From: Octopus sinensis
Taxonomy: Eukaryota
DNA length: 49,981 nucleotides
Direction: 5' to 3'
NCBI RefSeq assembly: GCF_006345805.1
Contig: NW_021834252.1
Coordinates: forward strand, 1-49,981
The position numbers were made by a program, and so were the translations under genes. This document shows positions 1,479-49,981 of the stretch, piece by piece. The notes beneath the pieces were generated by a model, which did not search any database, was not told the origin of the DNA, and saw only the letters and a program-made list of their open reading frames with translations. Position 1 is the first letter of the stretch, and every line of letters begins with the position of its first letter.

Positions 1479-1652
1479 ATTTCAAATTTTGGCACAAGGC
1501 CAACAATTAAATCGATCCCAGTGTTCAACTGGTACTTATTTTGTTGACCCCGAAAGGAAGGAAAGCAAAGTCGACTCCGTCGGTATTCGAACACAGAACG
1601 TGAAGCCGGAGCAAAGCATTTTTCCCGACGTGGTAACGATTTTGCCAACCCA
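1479..1652 (-). mobile_element. SINE family A (tail 2a), diverged with internal deletion
   Basis: tttcaaattttggcacaaggcc...aactggtacttattttgttgaccccgaaagga...aaagtcgac...ggtaacgattttgcca is the reverse complement of the family A layout. Confidence 0.8.
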
Positions 1653-2824
1653 GAGTCTTAATGCTAGAAAATATTATTATTAAAGAGATGTGAATTAGAA
1701 GGATCGTTAGCGCATCGAACATCCTATCTAGGTCAATGTTGCTTTTCATCATTTCCGGGCCAATAATATAAAGTACCAGTAACATATTAGGTGTCTTTTC
1801 TCAACAAAATTTCTGGCTTTATGCGTATGTCAGAAAAAATCTTTACTATTTCTGGAGCGAACGTCAAAATGGCTGCAGATAAACTGTTAACCAGATGTCA
1901 TTGATAAGGTTACTTAATCCCAGGTCTGCTTTGATACGGACAAAGCTATGTTGATAATAGTCAAAAGATCAACTCTTTTTCCTAGAATAAAGGATTTTTA
2001 ATGTGTCCTATTTTTATTTTTTAGATTTTAGTAAAATTTAAGGGAAATTCCGTTGCTATTTCTAGCAGGTCGAGTGACAGTGCAAAGGATATCTAATAGG
2101 CTCATACTGAAGTAGTTATTTAGTGAAGAAGACGGTGGTGTGAAAAAAATGATCGGGAAATTTAGTCTAAATCAAAATGAAAGTTACAGCTGGTATCAGT
2201 TCGCTCCCTGTACGCTCCCTTCATTTGCATAAAGATGAATGCAACTGAGATAGGTTTTGGAAACGGCTTCTTTGCATTTGTCAAAGATGAGTTAATTTTA
2301 ATTCCGTTAAAGGTACGTATCCTGACGCACAGATTGGTATCTACTCCGACGTAGAATTTGGATGTGTACGGTGGATGTTGTCTAGAAAGAATATTAAGAA
2401 AGATGTGAGAAGCGTGTGATTGGCTGATATTTTATACTTAGTATTGAATAGACATTTGAACTAATTATAAAGGGGAATAGTTAATTGCTTAGTCTAACAT
2501 ACTGGACTCATTTTCTTCTTCGGTGAAAAATAATTGTTATATTTTGTGAACTTTTTTCTGATAATTGATGACGCAGAATCTTATCAGCTGCCATGGTGAC
2601 AACAATATTCCTTATAAATAGCTATATGCAATTGATGGGATTCTCTGACGAATTCAGCGATGGACAATCAGTTGTTCTTCGTTGAACGAACGCTCGTCGC
2701 CTTAAACTAACGTGTAGGTGGCTGCGTACTTTACATATACATACACTCTTTACGCAGTTCCAAAACCGAATTAGCGCGACTTCAGAAGTCTCAAAGATTT
2801 TGAATTACGAAGCATTCGAGGGTT

Positions 2825-2985: not shown

Positions 2986-4424
2986 TTTAATCTTCGGATT
3001 AACTCATTGATTTGTGAATTGAACTGATTAGAGTTTGAGTGCTGCTCAGTATGAGGAGAAATGTTAGCAGTTGTGATATTTTAGCGGTCTTGAGTATGAA
3101 TATAGATTGGTATTCCAGAATATCAGAGTGCAGCCAGTCCACGGTGGTGGGAGTGAATGAATAGAGGGCTTTCATACATACGGCGGAGAGTTATACAAGT
3201 GGCGAGAAGAGATATAAAAGCTGTTGAGGAATCGTATGATTGGCTGAATGCCTTTTATGTAATATGGTAATATATGGAGAAGTGAAATAATTACGAAATG
3301 GAGGTGAGCAAATAGTTTTACATGCAGCACAACGCTACATGTATTATGAATGCGATTTCTTATTGATCTCACTTAAGCTGAAGGATCTATATTTATTTTC
3401 ATTTGCTTAATAAAGGAATTTACAGTAAAATTAGTTGTCCTTATATCGCCAGGTGGGTATCAGATACTATATTTTGATTGGCTTGTATTCTAGCCAATGG
3501 GAGATTTCACTCCTACTCATTATAGATAGTATATTAAATAAACTGAATATACACATCAATCATGTGACTCCGCATCTTCAGTGTAGAAGACAAAAATATC
3601 TCGAACGCCTTGACCACTTAAGTCATGTTCGGCAAAGTGGTCAATATTAACCACTGGGGTCTATAAAAACGTGAAAGTTTTTAAGCATTAAGGGTGCTTA
3701 TGTATTAGCGAATTAAGCATGGAAGAGCATGGTCATTTAAGGCTGAGGTGTACCAAATACCGCTGCAGTAACTAGTTTTCACTAAATACATATTTCTCTT
3801 TAAATATTTCCATTATATCAATATAATATAACTGAATTGTTCTATATCAATTTTATTAAGTATTTTCACTAGATTTCTTCAGATATTTCTTGTAGAAAAA
3901 GTGGAAATTACACAAAAGAACGAGCTTATCTTTATTAAATCAAGAAATTTTTTTATTAAGTATACCTTTTAGTTATATTTTGAAATTTACATGACGGAGG
4001 TCGATAGATTATCAAAGATTTCATAATGGTTTCAATGATAAAAGAATTTTACCTGCTCTTGACGTACATATTTGATTCTTTGCGAAGGTCCAGTTGTTGA
4101 TAGTAACAGGAAATATTTATTATCAGCATGGAATGAATGGTCTACATAATTTCTTATTTGATTAGTTCTGGGGGTACCACCGCAACTCCGAGTTTTTATC
4201 TTCTCATATATGGGTGAAAATGGAACCGAGAAGCGACAAGGAAGAGCCTCAGTTTAGAATGAATGATTTTTACTCCTACTAAATATTCTCTAATGCTTAG
4301 TCTCTGCAGTGAATTCAAACTCACAAACACAAACACATACAACGACGCACACCCCCACCGGCCTATTTATATATATATATACATGAAACAAATAGACACA
4401 CACATACTATAAGGATAAAAAGAG

Positions 4425-4490
4425 TTTCAAATTCTGGCACAGGACTAGCAATTTCGGGAGAGGGGCTAAGTCGATTACATCGAACCCAGT
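4425..4490 (-). mobile_element. SINE A 3' half (tail 2a)
   Basis: tttcaaattctggcacaaggactagcaatttcgggagaggggctaagtcgattacatcgaacccagt. Confidence 0.8.
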
Positions 4491-4507
4491 TGTTGGCTTT
4501 TTCCTTG

Positions 4508-4613
4508 TTTAGGGGTGATTACTTAAGTACCAATGAAACACTTGGCTCGATGTAATCGACTAGTCACCTCACCCCTCAAAAAAATTCAGGCCTTGTGCCT
4601 ATAGTAGAAAGAA
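4508..4613 (+). mobile_element. SINE A 3' half (tail 2b) followed by an ATT tract
   Basis: ttaagtaccaatgaaacacttggctcgatgtaatcgactag...ttcaggccttgtgcctatagtagaaaga then (ATT)n. Confidence 0.8.
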
Positions 4614-4660
4614 TTATTATTATTATTAATATTATTATTATCATTATTGCTATTATTATT

Positions 4661-4692
<32 letters not shown>

Positions 4693-4725
4693 TCATCATC
4701 ATTATTATTATTATTATTATTATTA

Positions 4726-4762
<37 letters not shown>
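4614..4762. repeat. Compound (ATT)n/(ATC)n microsatellite
   Basis: Directly visible trinucleotide runs. Confidence 0.95.
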
Positions 4763-4764
<2 letters not shown>

Positions 4765-5213
4765 GGCACCAAGTTGGCAGAGTCGCTAGTATCCCGGGTA
4801 AAATGCTTAGCGGTATTTCGCTGGCAGAACTGTTAGCACGCCGGGCGAAATGCTAAGCGGTATTTCGTCTGCGTTACGTTGTGAGTTCAAATTCCGCCGA
4901 GGTCGACTTTGCCTTTCATCCTTTCGGGGTCGATAAATTAAGTACCAGTTACGCATTGGAGTCGATGTAATCGATTTAATACCTATGTCTGTCCTTGTTT
5001 GTCCCCTCTGTGTTTAGCCCCTTGTGGGTAATAAAGAAATAGGTATTTCGCCCGTCGCTACGTCTACGTGCTGAGTTCAAATTCCGCCGAGGTCGACTTT
5101 GCCTTTCATCCTTTCGGGGTCAATAAATTAAGTACTAGTGAAACACTGTGGTCGATTTAATCGACTAGTTCCCTCCCCCAAAATTCCAAGGCCTTGTGCT
5201 TTCGGTAGAAAAG

Positions 5214-5259
<46 letters not shown>
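4763..5259 (+). mobile_element. SINE A host copy (tail 2b plus ATT tail), interrupted at GGTATTTCGC
   Basis: Head at 4763-4821. The element resumes at 5042 with the B box (gagttcaaattcc), core and tail, then (ATT)n at 5214-5259. Confidence 0.85.
4822..5041 (+). mobile_element. Young SINE A (tail 1) nested in another SINE A with a 10-bp TSD
   Basis: A box tggcagaactgttagc, B box gagttcaaattcc, tail ...ccccttgtgggtaataaagaaata. GGTATTTCGC is present at 4812-4821 and 5042-5051. Confidence 0.9.
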
Positions 5260-5260
<1 letters not shown>

Positions 5261-7730: not shown

Positions 7731-7735
<5 letters not shown>

Positions 7736-7963
7736 CTTCATTGCCCACAAGGGGCTAAACATAGAGGGGACAAACAAGGACATACAAACGAATTAAGTCG
7801 ATTACATCGACCCCAGTGCGAAACTGGTACTTTATTTATCGACCCCGAAAGGATGAAAGGCAAAGTCGACCTCGGCGGAATTTGAACTCAGAACGTAACG
7901 GCAGACGAAATATCGCTAAGAATTTCGCCCGGCGTGCTAACGTTTCTGCCAGCTCGCCGCCTT
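7731..7963 (-). mobile_element. Full-length young SINE A (tail 1) monomer between microsatellites
   Basis: Minus strand reads aaggcggcgagctggcagaaacgttagc...gagttcaaattcc...ccccttgtgggcaatgaagaaa and runs into (TA)n. Confidence 0.92.
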
Positions 7964-12710: not shown

Positions 12711-13510
12711 AGTCCCAAGCGTCTTTATCTGCGTCTCTATCTCCATATCAGGTCACCTTGATTCCTCTTATAGCCACTCTTTACCCCGCGGACATAGTCC
12801 TCGATAAATACTTCGGGGTGTAAGTTCAAATTATATGAGCAAATACGTGTGTTCTATAATGAGCATCTCTACATGCTGTGTAAACTGGTTTTCCTGCAGA
12901 TAGGACACTGACATTAGGAATCCTAGTCTGTCAGTTTATCTAATTTGACGTTATAAATGATGTTACGTTGGTGATGTTGCGGCTACACCGTGTATAGCAG
13001 GCACTAGGTTCGATTCCTATAGTTGATATTACGACTTATCTGTCCTATTTCTTGATTGCATATGTGTATATGCGTTCTTAATTGGTCATTAAGATACAAT
13101 TTCGATATGTCATATGTAGAGAAATCGCAAGAGATCACAGAATTGTAAATTAGTTTAGCCGACGGCAGGAAAGGGTGAAAGTCCCTTGTACAGAGAAATT
13201 GACTTGGAAAATAGGCATAAAATTGAAGGGTGGGGGGCGGGTGATAAGAAACGGCAAATAAATAAAGAAACTGACAGGTATTTGTATGTATGTGTGTATT
13301 TGTATGTATGTATGAGTGTGTATTCTCTCTCTATATATATATATGGTAGTAACTAAATGTGTTTTAAAAAAGATTTTCAAAAAACTCACATTTTGTAGGG
13401 AATAAATGTTTGAATGTCGATCGTATTTGGAAAAGATTGATAGATATTTGTATGTATGTGTGTATTTGTATATATGTATGAATGTGTATTCTGTCTCTAT
13501 ATATATATAT

Positions 13511-13736: not shown

Positions 13737-13776
<40 letters not shown>

Positions 13777-13930
13777 GACGGGCTTCTTTCAGTTTCCCTC
13801 TACCAAATTCACTCACAAGGCTTTGGCCGGCCCGAGGCTATAGTAGAAGACACTTGCCCAAGGTGCCACGCAGTGGGACTGAACCCGGAACCATGTGGTT
13901 GGTAAGCAAGCTACCTACCACACAGCCACT
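13511..13930 (-). mobile_element. Full-length SINE family B
   Basis: Minus strand: tRNA head (agtggctgtgtggtag...ccgggttcagtccc), gcaccttgggcaagtgtc, central gccttgtgagtgaatttggtag domain, internal microsatellite, and tail ...ctccagcatggccacagtcaaatgactgaaacaac followed by short taaaagag repeats. Confidence 0.92.
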
Positions 13931-21100: not shown

Positions 21101-21496
21101 TTACTTTTTACTCTTTTTCTTGTTTCAGTCATTTGACTGCGGCCATGCTGGAGCACCGCTTTTAGTCGAGCAAATCGACCCCAGGACTTATTCTTTGTAA
21201 GCCTAGTACTTATTCTATCAGCACCTTTTTGCCGAACCGCTAAATTACGGGGACGTAAACACACCAGCATCGGTTGTCAAGTGATGTTGGGGGACAAACA
21301 TATACACACACATACACACACACATATATATACATATATACGACGGCCTTCTTTCAGTTTCCGTCTACCAAATCCACTCACAAGGCTTTGGTCGGTCCGA
21401 AGCTATGGTAGAAGACACTTGCCGAAGGTGCCACGCAGTGGGACTGAACCCGGAACCATGTGGTTGATAAGCAAGCTACTTACCACGCAGCCATTC

Positions 21497-22650: not shown

Positions 22651-22830
22651 TCTATGTGTGTGCATACAACGAGCTTCTTTCAGTTTCCGTCTACCAAATC
22701 TACTCATCCCTTCAAAATGCTTTGGGCGGCCCAAAGATGTTATAGCAGAAAACGCTCGCACAAGGTGTCACGCAGTGGAGTTGAACCCGAGATCATATGG
22801 TTAGGGAGCAAGCTTCTTACCACACACCCA
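22431..22830 (-). mobile_element. SINE family B, more diverged
   Basis: ttgtttcagtc...atgctggagcacc...ttacggggacgtaaacacacc...cagtttccgtctaccaaatc...cacgcagtggagttgaacc. Confidence 0.88.
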
Positions 22831-23429
22831 TAAAATGTGTGACAAAGTGATGTACAGGCGAGGGATAAATAGTCCCCATTCCATTACGCTTCAAAGGCTT
22901 CATCCAGTTGTAGCTGTCCAAATGCAATAAATTGTCGGCTAAGAAGAACGAGTGAAGTTGAACGTATATCGAAGAAGAATGATAGACGAACAATCACGTG
23001 AGTTAGAAATGTATTTATATGAAAAAACTGCATATAGCATTTCTATGTTTTAAGACCATCTTGTAAATGATGTATGGAACTTTTCGTACTAATATATTTC
23101 TTATACCCGTTAGTGTATGCCTGTCATTTTTCTGACAAGATATATGTGTTTGTGTCCCACGGGTAGCTTTCGACTTTTCTATCCAAAAATGATTTTCAAC
23201 CAAATACTTAAATATCTTATTTATAGCTCTAAGCGCTTCGAGATCTACTGTTCCTAAAAAGAAATATGTATATGTGTGTGTGGGTGTATGTATGCATGTG
23301 TGTCAGTATATACATATGTGTGTGTGCATATGCATGTATGTCTGTATATGTGTGTGTGAGTGCGTGTGTGTGTAACATTAAAATCCCACTATCGATTTAA
23401 TGAGTGACACCAAACTTAATTTTTGTGAA

Positions 23430-23799
23430 TATTTTAGCACCAATTTCGGAGAAGAGGGTGACTCGATTAGACCAAACCCTATGATTGACTAGTACTTATT
23501 TAATCGTCTCTGACAGGATGAAAGACAGAGTCTACCTCGGCGGAATTTGAACGAGGGACGTTGAAGACGGGCGTAATGCCTATTTCTTTACTACCCACAG
23601 AGAGGACAAACAAGGACAGACAAACGGATTAAGTAGATTATATCGACCCCAGAGCGTAACTGGTACTTATTTAACCAACCCCGAAAGGTTGAAAGGCAAA
23701 GTCTGCTACGGCGGAATTTGAACTCAGAACATAAAGACAGACGAAATGCCGCTAAGCATTTCGTCCAGCGTGCTAACGTTTCTGCCAGCTTGCTGCTTT
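23430..23799 (-). mobile_element. SINE A dimer: tail-1 unit (23581-23799) joined to the B-box half of a tail-2 unit (23430-23580)
   Basis: Minus-strand junction ...gtagtaaagaaata|ggcattacgcccgtc... is at the same position as in 5041/5042. Confidence 0.85.
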
Positions 23800-23922
23800 A
23801 ATCCTTGTGAATATTAAAAAGAAATTTAACATAACAGAGACTGAAGTCGATGATTCTAAATACAAGAGCAACATAATATTGTAATATGTGACAAGGTATG
23901 AGTGCAAGTTTGTATTAATCGC

Positions 23923-24270
23923 AAGGCGGCGAGATGGCAGAAACGTTAGCACACCGGGTGAAATGCGTCTGCCATTACGTTCTGAGTTCAAATTCCGCCG
24001 AGGTCGACTTTGCCTTTCATCCTTTCGGGGTCGATAAAGTAAGTACCAGTTACACACTGGGGTCGATGTAATCGACTTGATCCGTTTGTCTGTCCTTGTT
24101 TGTCCCCTCTGTGTTTAGCCCCTTGTGGGTAGTAAAGAAATAGGTATTCCGTCTGCCGCTATGTTCTGAGTTCAAATTCTGCCGAGGTCGACTTTGCCTT
24201 TTATCCTTTCGGGGTCGACCAATGCTTTGTGAGTGAGTTTGGTAGATGGAAGCTGAAAGAAACACGTGGT
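23923..24270 (+). mobile_element. Composite SINE: A tail-1 unit (23923-24142), A B-box half (24143-24220), family B central domain (about 24215-24270)
   Basis: ...agtaaagaaata|ggtattccgtctgcc...atcctttcggggtcgacc|aatgctttgtgagtgagtttggtagatggaagctgaaagaa. Confidence 0.88.
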
Positions 24271-25049: not shown

Positions 25050-25548
25050 TATTATATATTATATGTATATATAATATGTATACTTATACACAGGTATACC
25101 TAACCGCACGAAGGTATACATACATCTACATACATCAGTGCAAGTGAAACAAGCAAACAGCATTACAAATGGGAGAGAGTTTAATTGAAGAAAGCTGGAT
25201 GATACAACGACCGAAGCCTTGTGACTAACATCTAAGATGACAGCCCAAGTTCGAATATATAAGTGTATTTCTGTTATCTTTCGTATTTGCAATTTTGTGG
25301 TTCATGTATAGAAATATCATTGAGACAGCTGAGTTGTATTTATTTCGTGAGAGATGAAACTAATCGAACGAAAGGAAACCAAGACAGCATAAAATCTCCC
25401 GTAGTTTGAGTAGAGTTCTGTTACTAATGAAGGTTCACAAATACGATGGAATATGATGAGATAGAATGTATCTCTACGTAGCATTATAATTCACATGGAA
25501 TATCTTAGTCTTGTGGAATTGCTTTAAAATACTCCTATGAGATTGAAC

Positions 25549-25985
25549 AGAGACGTGTAACCAAACGCATACCCTCCATCAGACACCTACCATACTCTGA
25601 GCGCCTTGTTTCCCTGGGCATGGATTCACTGAAGCTCCGGCGTCTGGCGATGGACTTGATAAACACCCGCAAAGTTATCAACCACCTCACCAACAACAAC
25701 ACTGAACACCTTTTTGATCTCCATGTGTCTAAGACACGTGGACATGCCTACAAAGTCAGAAAACAGCATAGCTCCCATGACTTTCGGAAACATTTTTTCA
25801 CGCTCAGAGTTGCTGAAGCATGGAATAAACTGCCTGCGTCAGTTGTTGACTGCCATGACACTGCATCCTTTAAGGCCCTCATGCTTTCCGAAATCCGTCG
25901 AAACTACACCTGATTATACATACACTTTAGATGAGTTGTAGTGCACCTGAGCACTGTACACAATTATTATTATTATTATTATTAT
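25549..25985 (+). mobile_element. 5'-truncated CR1-type LINE 3' end with (ATT)n tail
   Basis: QRRVTKRIPSIRHLPYSERLVSLGMDSLKLRRLAMDL...TRGHAYKV...RKHFFTLRVAEAWNKLP, stop at 25911-25913, short 3' UTR, ATT tail. Confidence 0.9.
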
Positions 25986-39316: not shown

Positions 39317-39947
39317 GTTAGTTAGTTAGTTAGTTAGTTAATTTGGCTCAAAAGCAAATAGCAAGGCCATGTAGGGGGCCATGGAGTTAAGTACAGGGTG
39401 GTGTTCATGTAAAGAGTTCAGGCCACTTGAGGTCCAGGGAGGCTTTGAACAAAGCGGTCGTCGGCATCTTCACCATCTCGTCTGGCAGCTTGTTCCACGG
39501 ATCCGCAACCCGGACGGAGAAAGCTCCTCTCCTTCGATTGAGATGAAATCGTCGCAGGTAGAGCTTTTCGGAATGACCCCGCAGCCGACGCTCTGGAGCA
39601 GGAGTGAAGAACAGCTCTTTCAAGAGGTTACACTTTCCACTTATGATGTTGTGGGCGAGAATGAGATCACCACGGCGGCGGCGTTTTTCAAGAGAATAAA
39701 GGTCGAGCGTCCTCAGCCTTTCTTCGTAGGACAAATTTTTGAGACCATGAACCATGCGGGTAGCCAGCCTCTGGACTCTTTCGAGGTGCTGTATGTCTTT
39801 GAGGAGATAAGGAGAAGAGGCTTGAATCCCATACTCCAATATGGGTCTCACCAGCATGACATAGAGTGGCAGGAATATGGCTGCTGTGAGCATTCCGAAT
39901 GACCGTCGAATCAAAAACAGAATTCCGCGCGCTTTGTTGGCAGCATT
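39317..39947 (-). mobile_element. Young 5'-truncated CR1/L2-type LINE 3' end with (TAAC)n tail
   Basis: Uninterrupted frame AANKARGILFLIRRSF...LVRPILEYG...LERVQRLATRMV...SLEKRRRRGDLI...LRGHSEKL...FSVRVADPWNKLP, stop at 39405-39407, tail (TAAC)n at 39317-39340. Confidence 0.92.
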
Positions 39948-41584
39948 ATTTTGGTTTATCGTTCATCTCAATCCCAACTGAGTCAAGCTCACACTTCCCC
40001 TTCAATGCTCCTCAGATATAGCTATATATAGTTATATCGGTCATTAGTTAAAACAGTGACATTCATCTAATCATCAAACCTAACCATTACACCCGGTCGT
40101 ACTGGTCTTCAACTCAACCAAATTTCAATAAAGTAAGTACAATAATATACTGGATGGGTGTATACAACTATCCCTCAGATGCCTGCAACTTTAGCCATAT
40201 CTCCACACTAAATATGCCATTGATTGTACCTTAGAAGCCAGTAATTCACTGAAGTATATACATCCGTGACACTAATACGTGAGAAAGCATTAAACCGACT
40301 TTTTCTTCATCAAATAGAAGTTGCTAAGAAACTATCAACGTTATTTGAAAACAATTTTAGGTTCAAAACATTCCCATAACCTAAATCAATATGGAATATA
40401 ATTGGAATTCTCTTTAAGAGTTTATTTTGGAGTAACACACAAATTTTATTCGGTGATGTAAAATTGCAGTTCCCAGCCGTTTTTATTATGTATTACGCAC
40501 AGGATATATATAAATGTAGCAAAACCTCCGATAGCTTATTTACAAATGCCCTAATAAGTCATATTAATATAGAAATTTAAATTACATTCCGTAAATAAGC
40601 AGTGCATGTATACACAGAATCATTCATTAAATATCTGTCACTAAACTAATGAGACTTTGCTACAATTCATAAATTTCATCATTTAGTCGTGGTTGAATAT
40701 TTAGCAAAGCGACATGTGGTTACGCTTTCATTGACAATGTCTTCGTTTTGATGTCAGTTAATGACAAGAGCGTCAACTCACACAAATATATGTTGCAAAA
40801 AGATAGTAACGCTTTTAGAAAGCTTTCACTGCCATCTCTGACACGGTTCTTTTGTATCGGTATCCAACAGGCGCCAATCAATAGCCCAGCATATTTTGAT
40901 ATCAATAAAATGTCGTCGCAGGGTATATCAGTAAGTGGTCTTGTTCTGCAGCGGTGAGATTAGTTTTATCGTAGGAATCCACAAATAATGAATGCAGCTT
41001 CCCGTTGAAGAGAAAGAGAATAATAACGAGCAAGTAGGTGTTGAGCCTGAGATACTCACACGTTACGTTCCGTAATACTTCTGCTTGGTCAAATGCATTC
41101 GCGTTACGAAAAACACGGACACATGCTGTATTTCACTTCTAAATAGAATCTTTTCCATAAAAGCAGATTTTTAGAAAAAGCATCTGTCATGCTCATCGAA
41201 ATAAGTAAGTTTTTTTGTAAATCCTGTATTGATTTGTAAAGTTTGTTATTGTTTGGTTGACTAAAATATATCAGTGAGATATACTTATCGAGTTCCACTC
41301 ACTAATTATTAATAATGGTTTTCGCTCTCTCATTAAACTATTTCATCTCGTTTCTGAATACATAAGTACGTTGCGGTACTTTATCATTGGACAAAATATG
41401 CGTTTTAATGTAAAACAAAAGGATAAGCAATAAAGTCTATTTCACTTGTAAAGTTGTGCAAATTAAACATTTTCACAATTTGATTATACACAAAGAACGA
41501 ATCATTACCAAGGATATCAATTGTCCGTGAAATTAATACATCACTTAGAAAAGGAAAACAAAAAACAAACAAATTATAGTAGTG

Positions 41585-43669: not shown

Positions 43670-44956
43670 CACCACCCTAAGGCAGATATACAACGAATTT
43701 ATCTGCCAAGAAAAGAGGGAGGCCGTGGTCTTTTGCAACTGGCAATAACAATGAAGATTGCTACAATTGGCCTAGACACCTACCTGAAAAACTCTGAGGA
43801 CTGGATGTTAAAACTTGTCTCAAAACATGAAAACAAGAAAGCATCATACTCAGTCACAAAACAGGCAAAGGAATATCTAAGTGAATTCCGAATACAACCA
43901 ATTTCGGAATTAGAGATAGACATACAAGAAACAAGCACAGAAAAAGCGAGGCGCATGAAAACCCGTGCCAAAACTGCGGCCTTAGATATTCTGAATAATA
44001 AATGGCAAGAAAAACCTCTCTATGGCAAATACCCAAAGAGAGCGAATAATGCAGATATTGACAAAGCCCTGACCCATCAATGGCTAATGGCTTCTGGCTT
44101 AAAATCTGAAACAGAAGGGTTTATCATAGCAGCTCAAGATCAATGCCTACTAACAAGAAACTACCAGGCCAACATATTAAAGATCAGAAGCAGTCCAACA
44201 TGTCGTGTATGAAAGCAACAAAATGAAACCATTGACCATGTGGTCTCCATGCAGTCTTCTAGCGCCTACAGAGTATCTCAACAGGCACGATAGAGCTGCA
44301 CAATATATTCACTGGGTAATCTGTAAAAACCTGGATTTGCCCCATGAAAAAAACTGTTGGGAACACAATCCACCTCCAGTGCTTGAAAACGACCACATCT
44401 CACTCACTCCTCTGGAACTTCACCATTCAACTGACAGAAAGATAGAGGCAAATAGGCCAGACATCATATTGAAAGACTTCAGACAAAGAATGCCTCCTCA
44501 TTGATATGACTGTCCAATCGATATAAACGTATCTGTCAAGACCTACCAAAAACTGAGCAAATATAAAGATCTTGAAATAGAAATCAGCAAAATGTGGAAC
44601 CTGAAGACTAAAACAATACCTGTTGTCATAGGTGCCCTGGGAATGATAGCGAAAGGGGCTGATTGCTACCTAACTCAGATACCAGGAAACCCCAAAATGG
44701 CAGAAATTCAAAAGATAGTGCTCATGGGAACTGCCCATATCCTACGCAAATACTCTCTATGTAATCCCAAGTTTAAAACAAACTTTTTTTTTAAATTTAT
44801 GTATTAGACATTCACTTGTACAACACCAAAAAAACCCAAATATATGGCACACAGACTAGACATAAAACAACGTGAATTTCCAACCTGTTGTCTCTTGAGG
44901 TCTCTGGGTGAGACTTGGAGCCAACTTGTACAGACATAAACAAAAGTCAAACATAG
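43670..44956 (+). mobile_element. 5'-truncated R4/Dong-type non-LTR retrotransposon (RLE endonuclease) inside a (TAA)n tract
   Basis: HPKADIQRIYLPRKEGGRGL...GLKSETEGFIIAAQDQ...CRV*...ETIDHVVS..C (CCHC knuckle), RHD, NRPDII, KYKDL, IPVVIGALG; several stops and frameshifts. TAA repeats lie on both flanks. Confidence 0.88.
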
Positions 44957-47342: not shown

Positions 47343-47505
47343 TACACATATATGTACGACAGGCTTCTTTCAATGTCCGTCTACCAAATCCGCTCACAAG
47401 GCTTTGGTCGACCTGAGGCTAGAGTGAAAGACACTTGCCTAAGATTCCACACAGTGAGATTGAACCCAGAACCATGAGGTTAGTAAGCAAGCTTCTAAAC
47501 ACACA
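47121..47505 (-). mobile_element. SINE B, diverged
   Basis: ttacttgtgtcagtcatt...tattctatcga...acgacaggcttctttcaatgtccgtctaccaaatccgctcacaaggctttggtcga...gaagacacttgcc. Confidence 0.85.
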
Positions 47506-48484: not shown

Positions 48485-48708
48485 TGGACTGGCTGGGTGA
48501 CTTACATTCACCTCTGGCAGGTGGGTGATGTTGAACATGCCTCAAATGGCGAAGCACCCGTTGCCCATCACACCCAAATGGGATTTAAGGTAAGTTATCT
48601 TGCGTGTCCACCACCCAGGTGTTTCTAACACCCAGCGCTTTGAGAGTGTATATACTCCCCCACGCTATTGCATCCACGGAAAAATACATTAAGTATATGT
48701 AGTTAATG

Positions 48709-48756
<48 letters not shown>
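48485..48756 (+). repeat. Unclassified interspersed repeat F, copy 2, with (TAA)n tract
   Basis: Homologous to 43405-43640; (TAA)n at about 48705-48756. Confidence 0.7.
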
Positions 48757-48761
48757 TATAG

Positions 48762-49815
48762 ATAAGTTTCTTTATTGGCCACACAGGGCTGCACACAGAT
48801 GGGACAAGTTACAAGGTAGAGCTTTTCTTTTGGGGATAGAAGAACAAAAAACCAAAGAAAAAAAAAAAAGGGGGTGGCGTAGGTTTTCGATCAAGAGGGA
48901 TCGTAAAAGGGAAGAAAAGAACAAAAACAAAAAAAACAAAAAAAATTGAATAAAATATAAAAAGAATAAAAAGAAAAAAGAAAAGGAAAAGGAAACAAAA
49001 GGAAAGAGAAATGAAAAAAGAAGAAAAAAATGGGAAAAAATAGGAAGAGGAAAAAAAAAGAACGATCAATAGGGATCGTGTATCACAGTGTTATGATATA
49101 TGGTGTAAAGGGGAAAGCAAGTAAGGTTTATCCGTGGAAGAAAAGCCTACGAAAAAGACCACGGTAACCTTGGTCATACTTGTTATATGTTACCACATTG
49201 TTTGCAAGTGGGTAACCCTCTGTTTTCAATTTCTGGCGTTCATAGGATTATGCTCAAGGTGGCTTCGTCATTCATACGTGCCATCCTTGCTACATTCACC
49301 CACAAAATTTTTTAAAACATTCGCTAGACAAAAACTTGCCTCTCTACTCTCACTTTCCTTTTCAAGTGGTACTTGAAGAAGTTGATGAGAGATTGACCAG
49401 AGAGGAAAGTGTTTGTCTCCAATCTTTCAGACGCGTCCACCAGATACATTCTTTCGCCATAGCCACAAGGATGATGAAAATAGCTCTTCCTTCCCGTTTG
49501 AAGGAAGGAGGCGTGACAATATTGACGATAGACTCAGCTGATAAACCGACTCGTCCCACACGTGACAGAAATTGTCGACATAAGCCCACAGGTCGGAAAT
49601 TGTTGGACACTGCACGAGTGCGTGCAGAACGGTTCGTCGCTCTGACCGCATCTCGGGCAGGTCGGCCCCGTGTTTCTCGAGCCGTGTCTGTAGAGCTTAT
49701 CCGGAACGGGTAGCGCTTCTCGGTAGCACTGCCAGGCCAGGGATCTCTGGAAGTTGTCCATGGGCCCTGGCCCGAAAGTCGTCCTGAACAGGCGGGTCAG
49801 GTACTCCTCGTCGAC
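48762..49815 (-). mobile_element. 5'-truncated L1-clade (Tx1-like) LINE: ORF2 C-terminus (zf-RVT) and 3' UTR
   Basis: FQRSLAWQCYREALPVPDKL...CPRCGQSDE(T)VLHALVQC...AMAKECIWWTRL with frameshifts; probable stop at 49240-49242; T-rich 3' UTR; AATAAA at 48776-48771. The Tx1 subclade assignment is an inference. Confidence 0.8.
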
Positions 49816-49981
49816 GTTTCCAGTTAAAACGTTTCCAGTTAAAACATTTCCCAAGAATAGTCAGTCCGAGGGGTTTTGTCTGTACTAAGCCAAACATGTT
49901 TTGGGAGAGTAGTGAGGCAGAAAGGGGAAGAGGGAGAGATAGAGATATATACATATATGCATATATATATAAGAGAGAGAT

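What the first reader, a model, noticed from the sequence alone, without database searches (positions are those of the whole stretch)
4763..5259. Tail-1 SINEs repeatedly end at the same GGTATTTCG site inside another SINE A (apparent self-targeted insertion)
Seen: three of four tail-1 copies join ...AAAGAAATA directly to the motif between the A and B boxes of a second A copy (5041/5042, 24142/24143, and 23581/23580 on the minus strand). At 4.8-5.0 kb the host head is retained and GGTATTTCGC is duplicated on both sides (10-bp TSD), and the host looks more diverged than the insert. The junction forms an inverted repeat, GAAATA-GG-TATTTC. Established: many Tx1-clade endonucleases are sequence-specific, with targets including snRNA/tRNA loci, microsatellites and other transposons. 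Inference: a Tx1-like enzyme cuts this site, so the SINE lands in its own relatives and splits their Pol III promoter, giving a LINE-SINE-SINE targeting system.
Basis: partly seen in the sequence, partly recalled or inferred. Interest (0 to 1): 0.8.

Follow-up and report, generated by a model that had tools for sequence, protein, structure and literature searches.

The report
Octopus SINE fused inside relative SINE
Three of four copies of one octopus SINE subfamily are joined, at exactly the same base, to the back part of a related SINE, but most of these look like two-part elements copied as one unit, not three fresh hits by a site-specific enzyme.

Summary
Three of the four tail-1 (T1) SINE copies end ...AAAGAAATA directly against consensus position 50 (GGYATTNCG) of a second SINE A unit, at 5041/5042, 24142/24143 and 23581/23580(-). 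Chance cannot give this.

New anatomy: the junction is the first base after the loop of a strong 12-13 bp hairpin in the SINE head.

The targeted-insertion reading is only partly supported:
- The 23.5 kb dimer has no host head and is flanked as a whole by a 16/18 duplication, so a host SINE that simply lost its head is unlikely.
- At 4.8 kb the 'host head' is about 19-21% diverged, while the supposed host remainder is 4.5%, as young as the T1 unit (p=0.007). The 8-10 bp 'TSD' is therefore doubtful.
- The 24.1 kb copy is T1 + A(50-127) + a piece of another SINE.
- The only LINE 3' end and the solo T1 are not at the motif.
- The three downstream units end in three different 3' parts and share no excess rare mutations, so a single master dimer is also unlikely.

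Best reading (confidence 0.42): a hot-spot junction formed repeatedly, then composites copied as units. Only about 70 kb of octopus DNA was reachable; genome-wide counts would decide.

The parts
4763..4819 (+).
   Evidence: nhmmer. It is 18.5-21% diverged at positions shared by both consensuses, like the old tail-2 monomers and unlike the unit at 5042.
4820..5041 (+). T1 unit, 5'-truncated at consensus position 11-13, ending ...AATAAAGAAATA.
   Evidence: T1 model positions 11-233, 194 bits. It is 95.5% identical to the T1 consensus.
5042..5260 (+). Second A unit from consensus position 50 to a T2b-type tail, plus an (ATT)n tail (5216-5260).
   Evidence: It is 4.5% diverged, the same age class as the T1 unit in front of it.
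4812..4821 (+). Upstream copy of GGTATTTCGC. The downstream copy is at 5042-5051. This is the apparent 8-10 bp target-site duplication.
   Evidence: Read directly. The final GC may belong to T1 positions 11-12. The age mismatch between the two flanking A parts makes a true TSD doubtful.
4842..4871 (+). Example of the head hairpin (consensus positions 33-62, loop 46-49), here in the T1 unit. In the interrupted units only the 3' arm (from position 50) is kept.
   Evidence: Fold energies are -16 kcal/mol (z -4.6) for T1 and -14.5 kcal/mol (z -3.6) for T2. The hairpin is intact in young copies and decayed in old ones.
23582..23799 (-). Full-length T1 unit of the 23.5 kb dimer (an older T1 variant with a 13-14 nt tail deletion).
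   Evidence: 89.5% identical to the T1 consensus.
23434..23581 (-). Second A unit from consensus position 50 to a short, degenerate tail-2-like end.
   Evidence: It is 20.7% diverged against 10.7% for its T1 unit (p=0.044).
23798..23815 (-). Upstream copy of the duplication AATATTCACAAGGATTAA. The downstream copy is at 23416-23433. Together they flank the whole 23.5 kb dimer.
   Evidence: 16 of 18 bases match exactly at both ends of the dimer. Only 36 of 20000 random placements in the window do as well.
23923..24142 (+). Full-length T1 unit of the 24.1 kb composite (13-nt deletion in the head).
   Evidence: 96.4% identical to the T1 consensus.
24143..24218 (+). Second A unit, consensus positions 50-127 only, with T1-like diagnostic bases (GTCTGCCGC).
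24219..24268 (+). Internal fragment of an unrelated SINE ('B'), joined to the A unit at the shared CGGGNCGA microhomology.
   Evidence: BLAST finds six other B copies with the same segment.
7731..7963 (-). Solo T1 copy, youngest of the four (about 2% diverged), followed by (TA)n and not by the motif.
48767..49870 (-). 5'-truncated LINE 3' fragment with frameshifts and a CCHC zinc knuckle. Its last ~45-50 nt are homologous to the T1 tail. It is followed by cttatctatat(ATT)n, not by the motif.
   Evidence: Six-frame translation. Tail match: BLAST 80% over 50 nt and nhmmer E=0.0012. zf-RVT scores 26 bits, below the 27.5 cutoff; its relative P0001 scores 38.6 bits.

Best explanation
The three junctions belong to composite SINEs. 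Each is a complete T1 SINE joined, at its exact 3' terminus, to the part of a SINE A that starts at consensus position 50. Position 50 is the first base after the loop of the head's 12-13 bp hairpin (an anticodon-arm-like structure).

The most likely history has two steps.

1. **Junction formation.** The junction is made at DNA level, when T1 is inserted by its own L1/Tx1-type LINE partner at this hot spot of an A copy. This would explain why the T1 terminus is exact. It must have happened more than once, because the downstream units are of different kinds.
2. **Copying as a unit.** T1 has no Pol III terminator. Transcripts started at the T1 promoter would therefore run on through the remainder of the A unit, and the downstream unit's own LINE partner would copy them elsewhere through that unit's 3' tail.

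The copies in this window are mainly such second-step units, not three primary insertions.

**Shown:** the fixed junction; its position at the hairpin loop edge; the whole-dimer duplication at 23.5 kb; the equal youth of the T1 unit and the downstream unit at 4.8 kb; the absence of T-runs in the 4.8 and 23.5 kb units.

**Inferred:** the nick at this site, the read-through transcripts, and which enzyme does what.
For: - **Junction position.** All three junctions are at consensus position 49|50. That position is the loop/3'-arm boundary of a strongly predicted hairpin.
- **Exact T1 terminus.** The T1 terminus at the junction is the same ...GAAATA as in the solo copy. With no TTTT in the T1 units and none before the end of the 4.8 and 23.5 kb composites (the 24.1 kb downstream unit has one at 24199), that terminus is more likely set by LINE-type priming than by a physical RNA end.
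- **Mobility as a unit.** The 23.5 kb dimer is flanked by a 16/18 duplication abutting the T1 head and the downstream unit's tail (p about 0.002). The duplication begins AATATT, like the 12-13 bp duplications of tail-2 monomers, which begin TATT, TAAT or TAGT.
- **Same age at 4.8 kb.** The T1 unit is 3.6% diverged and the downstream unit 4.5%. The upstream head fragment is 18.5-21% diverged.
- **Repeated formation.** The downstream units end in three different 3' parts and show no excess of shared rare substitutions.
- **Nested insertion at the same place elsewhere.** In O. vulgaris locus L002 (12680-12990), a 5'-truncated tail-2 SINE sits at TATTTC (position 52). The duplicated host segment carries the same derived tggctcttta block.
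Against: - No unambiguous primary nested insertion is in hand, meaning a host head and host remainder of equal age with a clean TSD. The 4.8 kb locus fails the age test.
- The only LINE 3' end and the solo T1 are not at the motif, so any specificity is at best partial.
- The 24.1 kb composite shows no duplication and ends in a fragment of another SINE. That looks more like template switching or recombination.
- Read-through transcripts are not demonstrated.
- The sample is 3 junctions in about 70 kb.
- The consensus sequences were built from few copies, so divergence values are rough.
Confidence: 0.42

Rival explanations
1. Each of the three junctions is a separate primary insertion by a sequence-specific Tx1-like endonuclease that cuts GGTATTTCG, so T1 lands in its relatives and splits their Pol III promoter.
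For: - The junction is at the same nucleotide three times.
- There is an 8-10 bp repeat at 4812-4821 and 5042-5051.
- T1 shares its tail with a LINE fragment carrying a zf-RVT knuckle.
- O. vulgaris carries 56 Mb of L1-Tx1 elements (PMC13282606).
- SINEU elements mobilised by Tx1-Mar target a Mariner family (PMC4494074).
Against: - Two of the three junctions have no host head.
- The 23.5 kb dimer has a whole-unit duplication directly abutting the T1 head. A primary insertion would need an exact deletion of the host head to give this.
- At 4.8 kb the head is 18.5-21% diverged and the remainder 4.5%, which does not fit one host (p=0.007).
- The LINE copy and the solo T1 are not at the motif.
- The LINE clade is untested.
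Confidence: 0.15
2. RNA-level chimeras. During reverse transcription of an A-type SINE RNA by that RNA's own LINE partner, the enzyme stops or runs off at the hairpin loop (position 50), perhaps on a loop-cleaved or modified RNA. It then jumps to the 3' end of a T1 RNA. Each dimer is a new chimeric retrocopy.
For: - The anatomy matches known template-switch chimeras: a complete 5' partner, a 5'-truncated 3' partner, and a duplication around the whole.
- The break lies exactly at the loop edge of a stable RNA hairpin.
- Both units are equally young at 4.8 kb.
- The 24.1 kb composite has a second switch-like joint at a microhomology with SINE B.
- Template jumps giving 5' extensions are described for Tx1-associated SINEs (PMC4494074).
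Against: - Known chimeras have variable break points; here the point is fixed.
- T1 has no Pol III terminator, so a physical T1 RNA 3' end at ...GAAAUA is not expected. Yet all three junctions use exactly that terminus.
- There is no microhomology between the cDNA end and the T1 end.
- No A copy starting at position 50 was seen without an upstream SINE, though the number of copies is small.
Confidence: 0.18
3. One or a few master dimers. A single chance nested insertion created a T1-A(50) composite that then amplified as a family. The shared junction is inherited, and there is no targeting at all.
For: - At least two of the three copies behave as mobile units.
- The two T1 units without a host head share TAGTAAAG.
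- Single shared variants exist between pairs of downstream units: C59 and TACTAGT in the 5042 and 23580 units, GCTA in the 5042 and 24143 units.
Against: - The three 3' parts differ, and the diagnostic bases at positions 59-66 differ.
- Shared rare substitutions among the downstream units do not exceed the background between unrelated copies.
- The T1 units track the age classes of monomeric T1 and do not form their own lineage.
Confidence: 0.2

Closest known systems
SINEU families mobilised by Tx1-Mar LINEs in crocodilians, which insert preferentially into the Mariner-N4_AMi transposon (Kojima 2015, PMC4494074)
   Same: A SINE whose presumed partner is an L1/Tx1-type LINE is found again and again at one place inside another transposon family. 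5' additions and chimeras accompany it.
   Different: Here the target is a relative of the SINE itself. Most copies lack the upstream part of the target. The LINE copy in the window is not at the site. The LINE clade and the shared target preference of LINE and SINE are not shown.
Sequence-specific Tx1-clade LINEs: Keno in U2 snRNA genes, Kibi and Koshi in microsatellites, Tx1 in Tx1D (Kojima and Fujiwara 2004, as cited in PMC4494074)
   Same: These are APE-type endonuclease LINEs with narrow target choice, including small-RNA genes and repeats. The site here is an anticodon-arm-like hairpin of a tRNA-type SINE head.
   Different: No endonuclease or reverse-transcriptase sequence of the LINE is available here. 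LINE and solo SINE flanks in the window are (TA)n- and (ATT)n-like, not the motif.
Composite or dimeric SINEs that amplify as one unit (for example tRNA-dimer SINEs and Alu; reviewed in PMC4758252)
   Same: Two SINE-derived modules are joined at a fixed point. One copy has a duplication around the whole unit, and in another both modules are the same age.
   Different: The second module varies in subfamily and 3' part between copies, and no diagnostic substitutions are shared across both modules.
Chimeric retrocopies made by reverse-transcriptase template switching (U6-L1 type; Buzdin 2003, as cited in PMC4758252)
   Same: A full-length small RNA-like 5' part ending at its own 3' terminus is fused to a 5'-truncated retroelement, with a duplication around the whole.
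   Different: The break point is fixed here and not variable. The acceptor has no obvious physical RNA 3' end at the junction.
3' transduction or read-through mobilisation of downstream flank (known for L1; from general knowledge)
   Same: The lack of a terminator at the T1 end would carry downstream A sequence into the transcript.
   Different: Here the transduced flank would supply a second, different LINE-recognition tail that takes over mobilisation. This is not demonstrated.

Membership tests
Target-specific Tx1-clade LINE/SINE partnership | The partner LINE belongs to the Tx1 clade (by reverse-transcriptase and endonuclease phylogeny). | not testable with these tools
   Only about 1.1 kb of the LINE 3' end lies in the window, with frameshifts. 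It gives only a zf-RVT hit at 26 bits, below the cutoff of 27.5; its relative P0001 scores 38.6 bits. There is no PDB relative. The domain is shared by L1 and Tx1 groups.
Target-specific Tx1-clade LINE/SINE partnership | The SINE and the LINE share a 3' tail. | tested here: met
   Window 48767-48816 matches the T1 tail at 80% over 50 nt (BLAST E=3.9e-07; nhmmer E=0.0012). Both contain AATAAAGAAA.
Target-specific Tx1-clade LINE/SINE partnership | LINE copies and SINE copies sit at the same target sequence. | tested here: not met
   The single LINE 3' end is followed by cttatctatat(ATT)n and the solo T1 by (TA)n. One copy of each is too few to be final.
Target-specific Tx1-clade LINE/SINE partnership | Independent insertions: both halves of the target are kept, with a target-site duplication. 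| tested here: inconclusive
   One of the three junctions has an upstream head and an 8-10 bp repeat, but the head is 18.5-21% diverged and the remainder 4.5% (p=0.007). The other two have no head.
Composite (dimeric) SINE amplified as a unit | There is a fixed junction between two SINE-derived modules in several copies. | tested here: met
   Three copies join the T1 terminus to consensus position 50.
Composite (dimeric) SINE amplified as a unit | A target-site duplication surrounds the whole composite. | tested here: inconclusive
   It is clear at 23.5 kb (16/18; 36 of 20000 random placements). It cannot be read at 4.8 kb because both sides are (ATT)n. None was found at 24.1 kb.
Composite (dimeric) SINE amplified as a unit | Diagnostic substitutions are shared across copies in both modules (a common master). 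| tested here: not met
   Shared rare states among the downstream units are no more frequent than between unrelated A copies. The 3' parts differ. With only three copies the power is low.
Template-switch chimeric retrocopy | The break point in the 3' partner is variable, and the acceptor RNA has a physical 3' end at the joint. | tested here: not met
   The break point is identical in all three. The T1 units carry no T-run that would end a Pol III transcript at the joint, and the first runs in the 4.8 and 23.5 kb composites lie beyond their ends.
tRNA-derived SINE | The head is recognisable as tRNA-like. | tested here: inconclusive
   ARAGORN found no tRNA in the window. Rfam gave no tRNA match at the gathering threshold, or at E<=10 on one T1 copy. 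A B-box-like GAGTTCAAATTCC and a hairpin with loop TTAGC (resembling an Ala-AGC anticodon loop, from memory only) are visible in the sequence.

The most novel reading that the evidence does not exclude
The T1 partner LINE (L1/Tx1 type) nicks SINE A DNA at the edge of the anticodon-arm-like hairpin loop, between the positions equivalent to tRNA 36 and 37. T1 would then land repeatedly in its own relatives. The nested T1 would use its intact Pol III promoter and the host's tail to be copied onward by a second, unrelated LINE. That would be a two-LINE relay in which one SINE parasitises another.
Probability: 0.25. Interest if true: 0.65.

Novelty: new member of a known kind. Interest (0 to 1): 0.4.

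Why it matters
SINEs make up about 11-12% of the Octopus vulgaris genome, and almost all of its SINE families are unclassified (PMC13282606).

A fixed fusion point at a structured site of the SINE head would show how new composite SINE families are born in cephalopods. If targeting is real, it would add a case of a retroelement using its own relatives as a landing pad, plus a hand-over between two LINE machineries.

If instead it is only an amplified composite, the main value is practical. Repeat annotation would count these as two elements and over-count 'insertions into SINEs'.

Tried and rejected
**Getting more octopus DNA**
The LINE C-terminus gave one 929-bp contig.
- The CR1-like ORF gave one O. 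vulgaris locus, L002.
- A peptide spanning the junction gave nothing.
- The window's own ORF is not on record.
- Two other hits were not octopus.
- Two metagenome scans found nothing. The bacterial/archaeal genome scan gave one unrelated 22-nt match.
- A full-text search for the SINE sequences, and a search of one paper's supplementary file, found nothing.

**Readings tested and dropped**
- I first took the 3' flank of tail-2 copy b (AGTATTTCCTGG...) for another partial A unit. Alignment gave z = -0.4, and it turned out to be b's own 13-bp duplication.
- An apparent duplication around the 24.1 kb composite (gagtgcaagtttgta / gagtgagtttggta) is part of the SINE B consensus.
- I first read the L002 pair as a tail-2 dimer with an internal deletion. 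The shared derived block fits better with a 5'-truncated insert nested in one host.
- The junction inverted repeat is not significant as a functional hairpin. A DNA-level cruciform is weak, at -5.6 to -6.7 kcal/mol.
- The tRNA origin of the head could not be confirmed with ARAGORN or Rfam. The 22-nt archaeal match is not in a called tRNA.
- The LINE clade could not be settled through Pfam or PDB.

Full report
**Setting**

The window is octopus-type DNA: 35.7% G+C, dense in microsatellites and SINEs. A CR1-like LINE ORF at 39408-39962(-) is 96.6% identical at the DNA level to a copy on Octopus vulgaris chromosome OX597823.1. That locus, L002 (20.5 kb), was the only other octopus DNA I could obtain. 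All other routes failed. Everything below therefore rests on about 70 kb.

**The elements**

SINE A has a head that begins aaggcggcgagctggcag, a B-box-like GAGTTCAAATTCC, and a conserved body. It comes in three tail types.

| Type | Tail | Copies | Divergence |
|---|---|---|---|
| Tail-2 (T2a) | ...gtgccaaaatttgaaaYC | b, e, f, g, h, i, j | 13-17% (body); heads 10-23% |
| Tail-2 (T2b) | ...gtagaaagATT(ATT)n | d, and the unit at 5042 | d about 13% |
| Tail-1 (T1) | about 60 nt ending ...ccccttgtgggtaataaagaaata | 4820/4822-5041(+), 7731-7963(-), 23582-23799(-), 23923-24142(+) | 2-11% |

The last 45-50 nt of the T1 tail match the 3' end of a 5'-truncated, frameshifted LINE fragment at 49870-48767(-). 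Its translation carries a CCHC knuckle (zf-RVT, 26 bits; its relative P0001 scores 38.6 bits). O. vulgaris is reported to hold 56 Mb of L1-Tx1 elements (PMC13282606). The clade of this particular LINE could not be tested.

**Check of the observation**

It is correct. Three of the four T1 copies run without a spacer from ...AAAGAAATA into GGTATTTCGCC (5042), GGCATTACGCC (23580, minus strand) and GGTATTCCGTC (24143). All three start at consensus position 50 of SINE A. The fourth runs into (TA)n. With roughly 17 A units in 50 kb, three hits on one nucleotide and one strand cannot be chance.

**New anatomy: the site is the edge of a hairpin loop**

Positions 33-62 of the head fold into a 12-13 bp hairpin with the loop UAGC at positions 46-49.

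- T1 consensus: -16 kcal/mol, z -4.6.
- T2 consensus: -14.5 kcal/mol, z -3.6.
- Pairing probabilities are close to 1.
- The hairpin is intact in young copies and decayed in old ones.

All three junctions fall between C49 and G50. The partial unit therefore keeps the complete 3' arm and none of the loop.

TATTTC is that 3' arm. Its natural partner is GAAATG on the 5' arm, and the T1 terminus GAAATA resembles it. The hairpin formed by the junction itself is weak (-3.6 kcal/mol, z -0.4).

The loop sequence TTAGC recalls an Ala-AGC anticodon loop. That is from memory only. ARAGORN and Rfam do not call the head a tRNA.

**The 23.5 kb copy is not a host that simply lost its head**

It consists of a full-length T1 (from position 1-2) plus A(50 to a short tail-2-like end). 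There is no host head. AATATTCACAAGGATTAA (23815-23798) abuts the T1 head, and AATATTCACAAAAATTAA (23433-23416) abuts the end of the second unit. This is a 16/18 match, reached by only 36 of 20000 random placements in this repeat-rich window.

Tail-2 monomers have 12-13 bp duplications beginning TATT, TAAT or TAGT. The dimer's duplication begins AATATT, so the style is similar. A primary T1 insertion into a resident A copy would have left the host head between the duplication and T1.

Two readings remain. Either the dimer arrived as one unit, or a resident copy was converted through homology. Unit 1 is a patchwork of T1-like and T2-like bases, and the second unit is more diverged than the first (20.7% against 10.7%, p=0.044).

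It does have an A head (4763-4819), a T1 truncated at position 11-13, and an 8-10 bp repeat (4812-4821 and 5042-5051). But the divergences at positions where both consensuses agree do not fit one host:

| Part | Mismatches | Divergence |
|---|---|---|
| Head fragment 4763-4819 | 10 of 54 | 18.5% (21% over positions 1-49) |
| Supposed host remainder 5042-5169 | 5 of 111 | 4.5% |
| T1 unit | - | 3.6% |

The difference between head and remainder has Fisher p=0.007. In ordinary tail-2 monomers, head and body differ far less than this, and in either direction.

The head therefore belongs to the old cohort, and T1 plus the second unit are one young pair. The simplest reading is that a young, 5'-truncated T1-A(50)-T2b composite was copied into the (ATT)n tail region of an old relative. 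The overlap at positions 50-59 could then be a coincidence of roughly one in ten, or could reflect the same fragile site. A true nested insertion followed by replacement of the old remainder remains possible. Either way, the TSD is not the clean proof it seemed.

**The 24.1 kb copy**

It is T1 + A(50-127, with T1-like diagnostic bases) + about 50 nt from the inside of an unrelated SINE 'B'. The A and B parts are joined at the shared CGGGNCGA. There is no duplication around it.

**One master or several origins?**

The three second units end differently: T2b with (ATT)n, a short T2a-like end, and a SINE B fragment. They also differ at the diagnostic positions 59-66. Their shared rare substitutions do not exceed what unrelated A copies share. 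The T1 units follow the age classes of T1 in general. Several origins are more likely than one, but three copies give little power.

**A related case elsewhere**

In L002 (12680-12990), a 5'-truncated tail-2 SINE (12763-12834) sits inside an old tail-2 SINE at TATTTC (position 52). A 22-27 bp host segment is duplicated, and both copies carry the same derived block tggctcttta. So another SINE, with another partner, has used almost the same spot. Because tail-2 duplications generally begin TATT, one such case among about ten tail-2 copies could be chance.

**Mechanism**

Several findings point to a DNA-level origin of the junction, followed by read-through transcription and copying through the downstream tail:

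- The T1 terminus at the junction is exactly the terminus seen in the solo copy.
- The T1 units contain no TTTT. The first TTTT run lies beyond the composite at 4.8 and 23.5 kb, and at 24199 inside the downstream unit at 24.1 kb.
- There are unit-type features at 23.5 and 4.8 kb.

I give this combined account a confidence of 0.42.

The rivals are:

- A template jump at the hairpin loop during reverse transcription of A RNA (0.18). It fits the anatomy and the 24.1 kb mosaic. It does not explain the fixed break point or the exact T1 terminus without a physical RNA end there.
- One or a few master dimers with no targeting (0.20).

**Comparison with known systems**

The nearest precedent is the crocodilian SINEU families. 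They are mobilised by Tx1-Mar LINEs, are found almost only inside the Mariner-N4_AMi transposon, and carry 5' extensions attributed to template jumps (PMC4494074).

Membership in that kind is not established here. The shared tail is met. The shared LINE and SINE target is not met in this small sample. The clade is untestable, and clean TSD-bearing insertions are lacking. As a composite SINE, the fixed junction and one whole-unit duplication are met, but shared diagnostic substitutions are not.

**Verdict**

This is a new member of known kinds (a composite SINE, or a site-preferring SINE insertion), with a useful new detail: the junction lies at the loop edge of the head hairpin. Interest is 0.4. 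A genome-wide count of junction classes and of LINE flanks would settle it.

Noticed in passing
window 13775-13826(-), 21338-21391(-), 22664-22717(-), 47365-47407(-); L002 5743-5796(-), 16213-16255(+): There is a second, unrelated tRNA-type SINE ('B': ...ggttccgggttcagtcccactg...ccaaagccttgtgagtggatttggtagacggaaactgaaagaagcccgtcgt, followed by an internal microsatellite). A 50-nt piece of it is fused to the A unit at 24219-24268.
   Followed up: partly
window 39408-39962 (-): An open C-terminal ORF of a CR1-like LINE (relatives are bird and turtle CR1 proteins) is 96.6% identical in DNA to a copy on O. vulgaris chromosome OX597823.1. The family is therefore young. This ORF identified the organism.
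   Followed up: partly
window 4424-4505(-) / 4494-4610(+); 1480-1652(-) / 1721-1830(+); 23434-23799(-) / 23923-24268(+): Three head-to-head inverted pairs of SINE A pieces occur in the window. The first pair overlaps by 11 nt, like a twin-priming inversion. The two T1 dimers are only 123 bp apart in opposite orientation.
   Followed up: no
window 4611-4762, 5216-5260, 48700-48755: T2b-type SINE copies end in (ATT)n and sit in or next to (ATT)n arrays. The LINE 3' end at 48767 also runs into (ATT)n. This suggests microsatellite-primed insertion for at least one of the machineries.
   Followed up: no
L002 12680-12990: A 5'-truncated tail-2 SINE is nested in an old tail-2 SINE at TATTTC (consensus position 52), 2 nt from the T1 junction site, with a 22-27 bp duplicated host segment.
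   Followed up: yes
L003 3318-3339 (Natrialba taiwanensis contig): The SINE's B-box region TTCAAATTCCGCCGAGGTCGAC has an exact 22-nt match in an archaeal genome. No tRNA is called there. About 0.07 such hits are expected by chance in that collection.
   Followed up: partly
L001 (ENA metagenome contig, 929 bp): This contig carries a 73%-identical relative of the LINE C-terminus, followed by (ATT)n and a SINE A-like head. Cephalopod-like DNA is therefore present in a metagenome assembly.
   Followed up: no
window 43670-44209 (+), 25509-25910 (+): Two further open LINE-like C-terminal fragments have no Pfam match. The second is 78% identical in DNA to L002 13794-14153.
   Followed up: no
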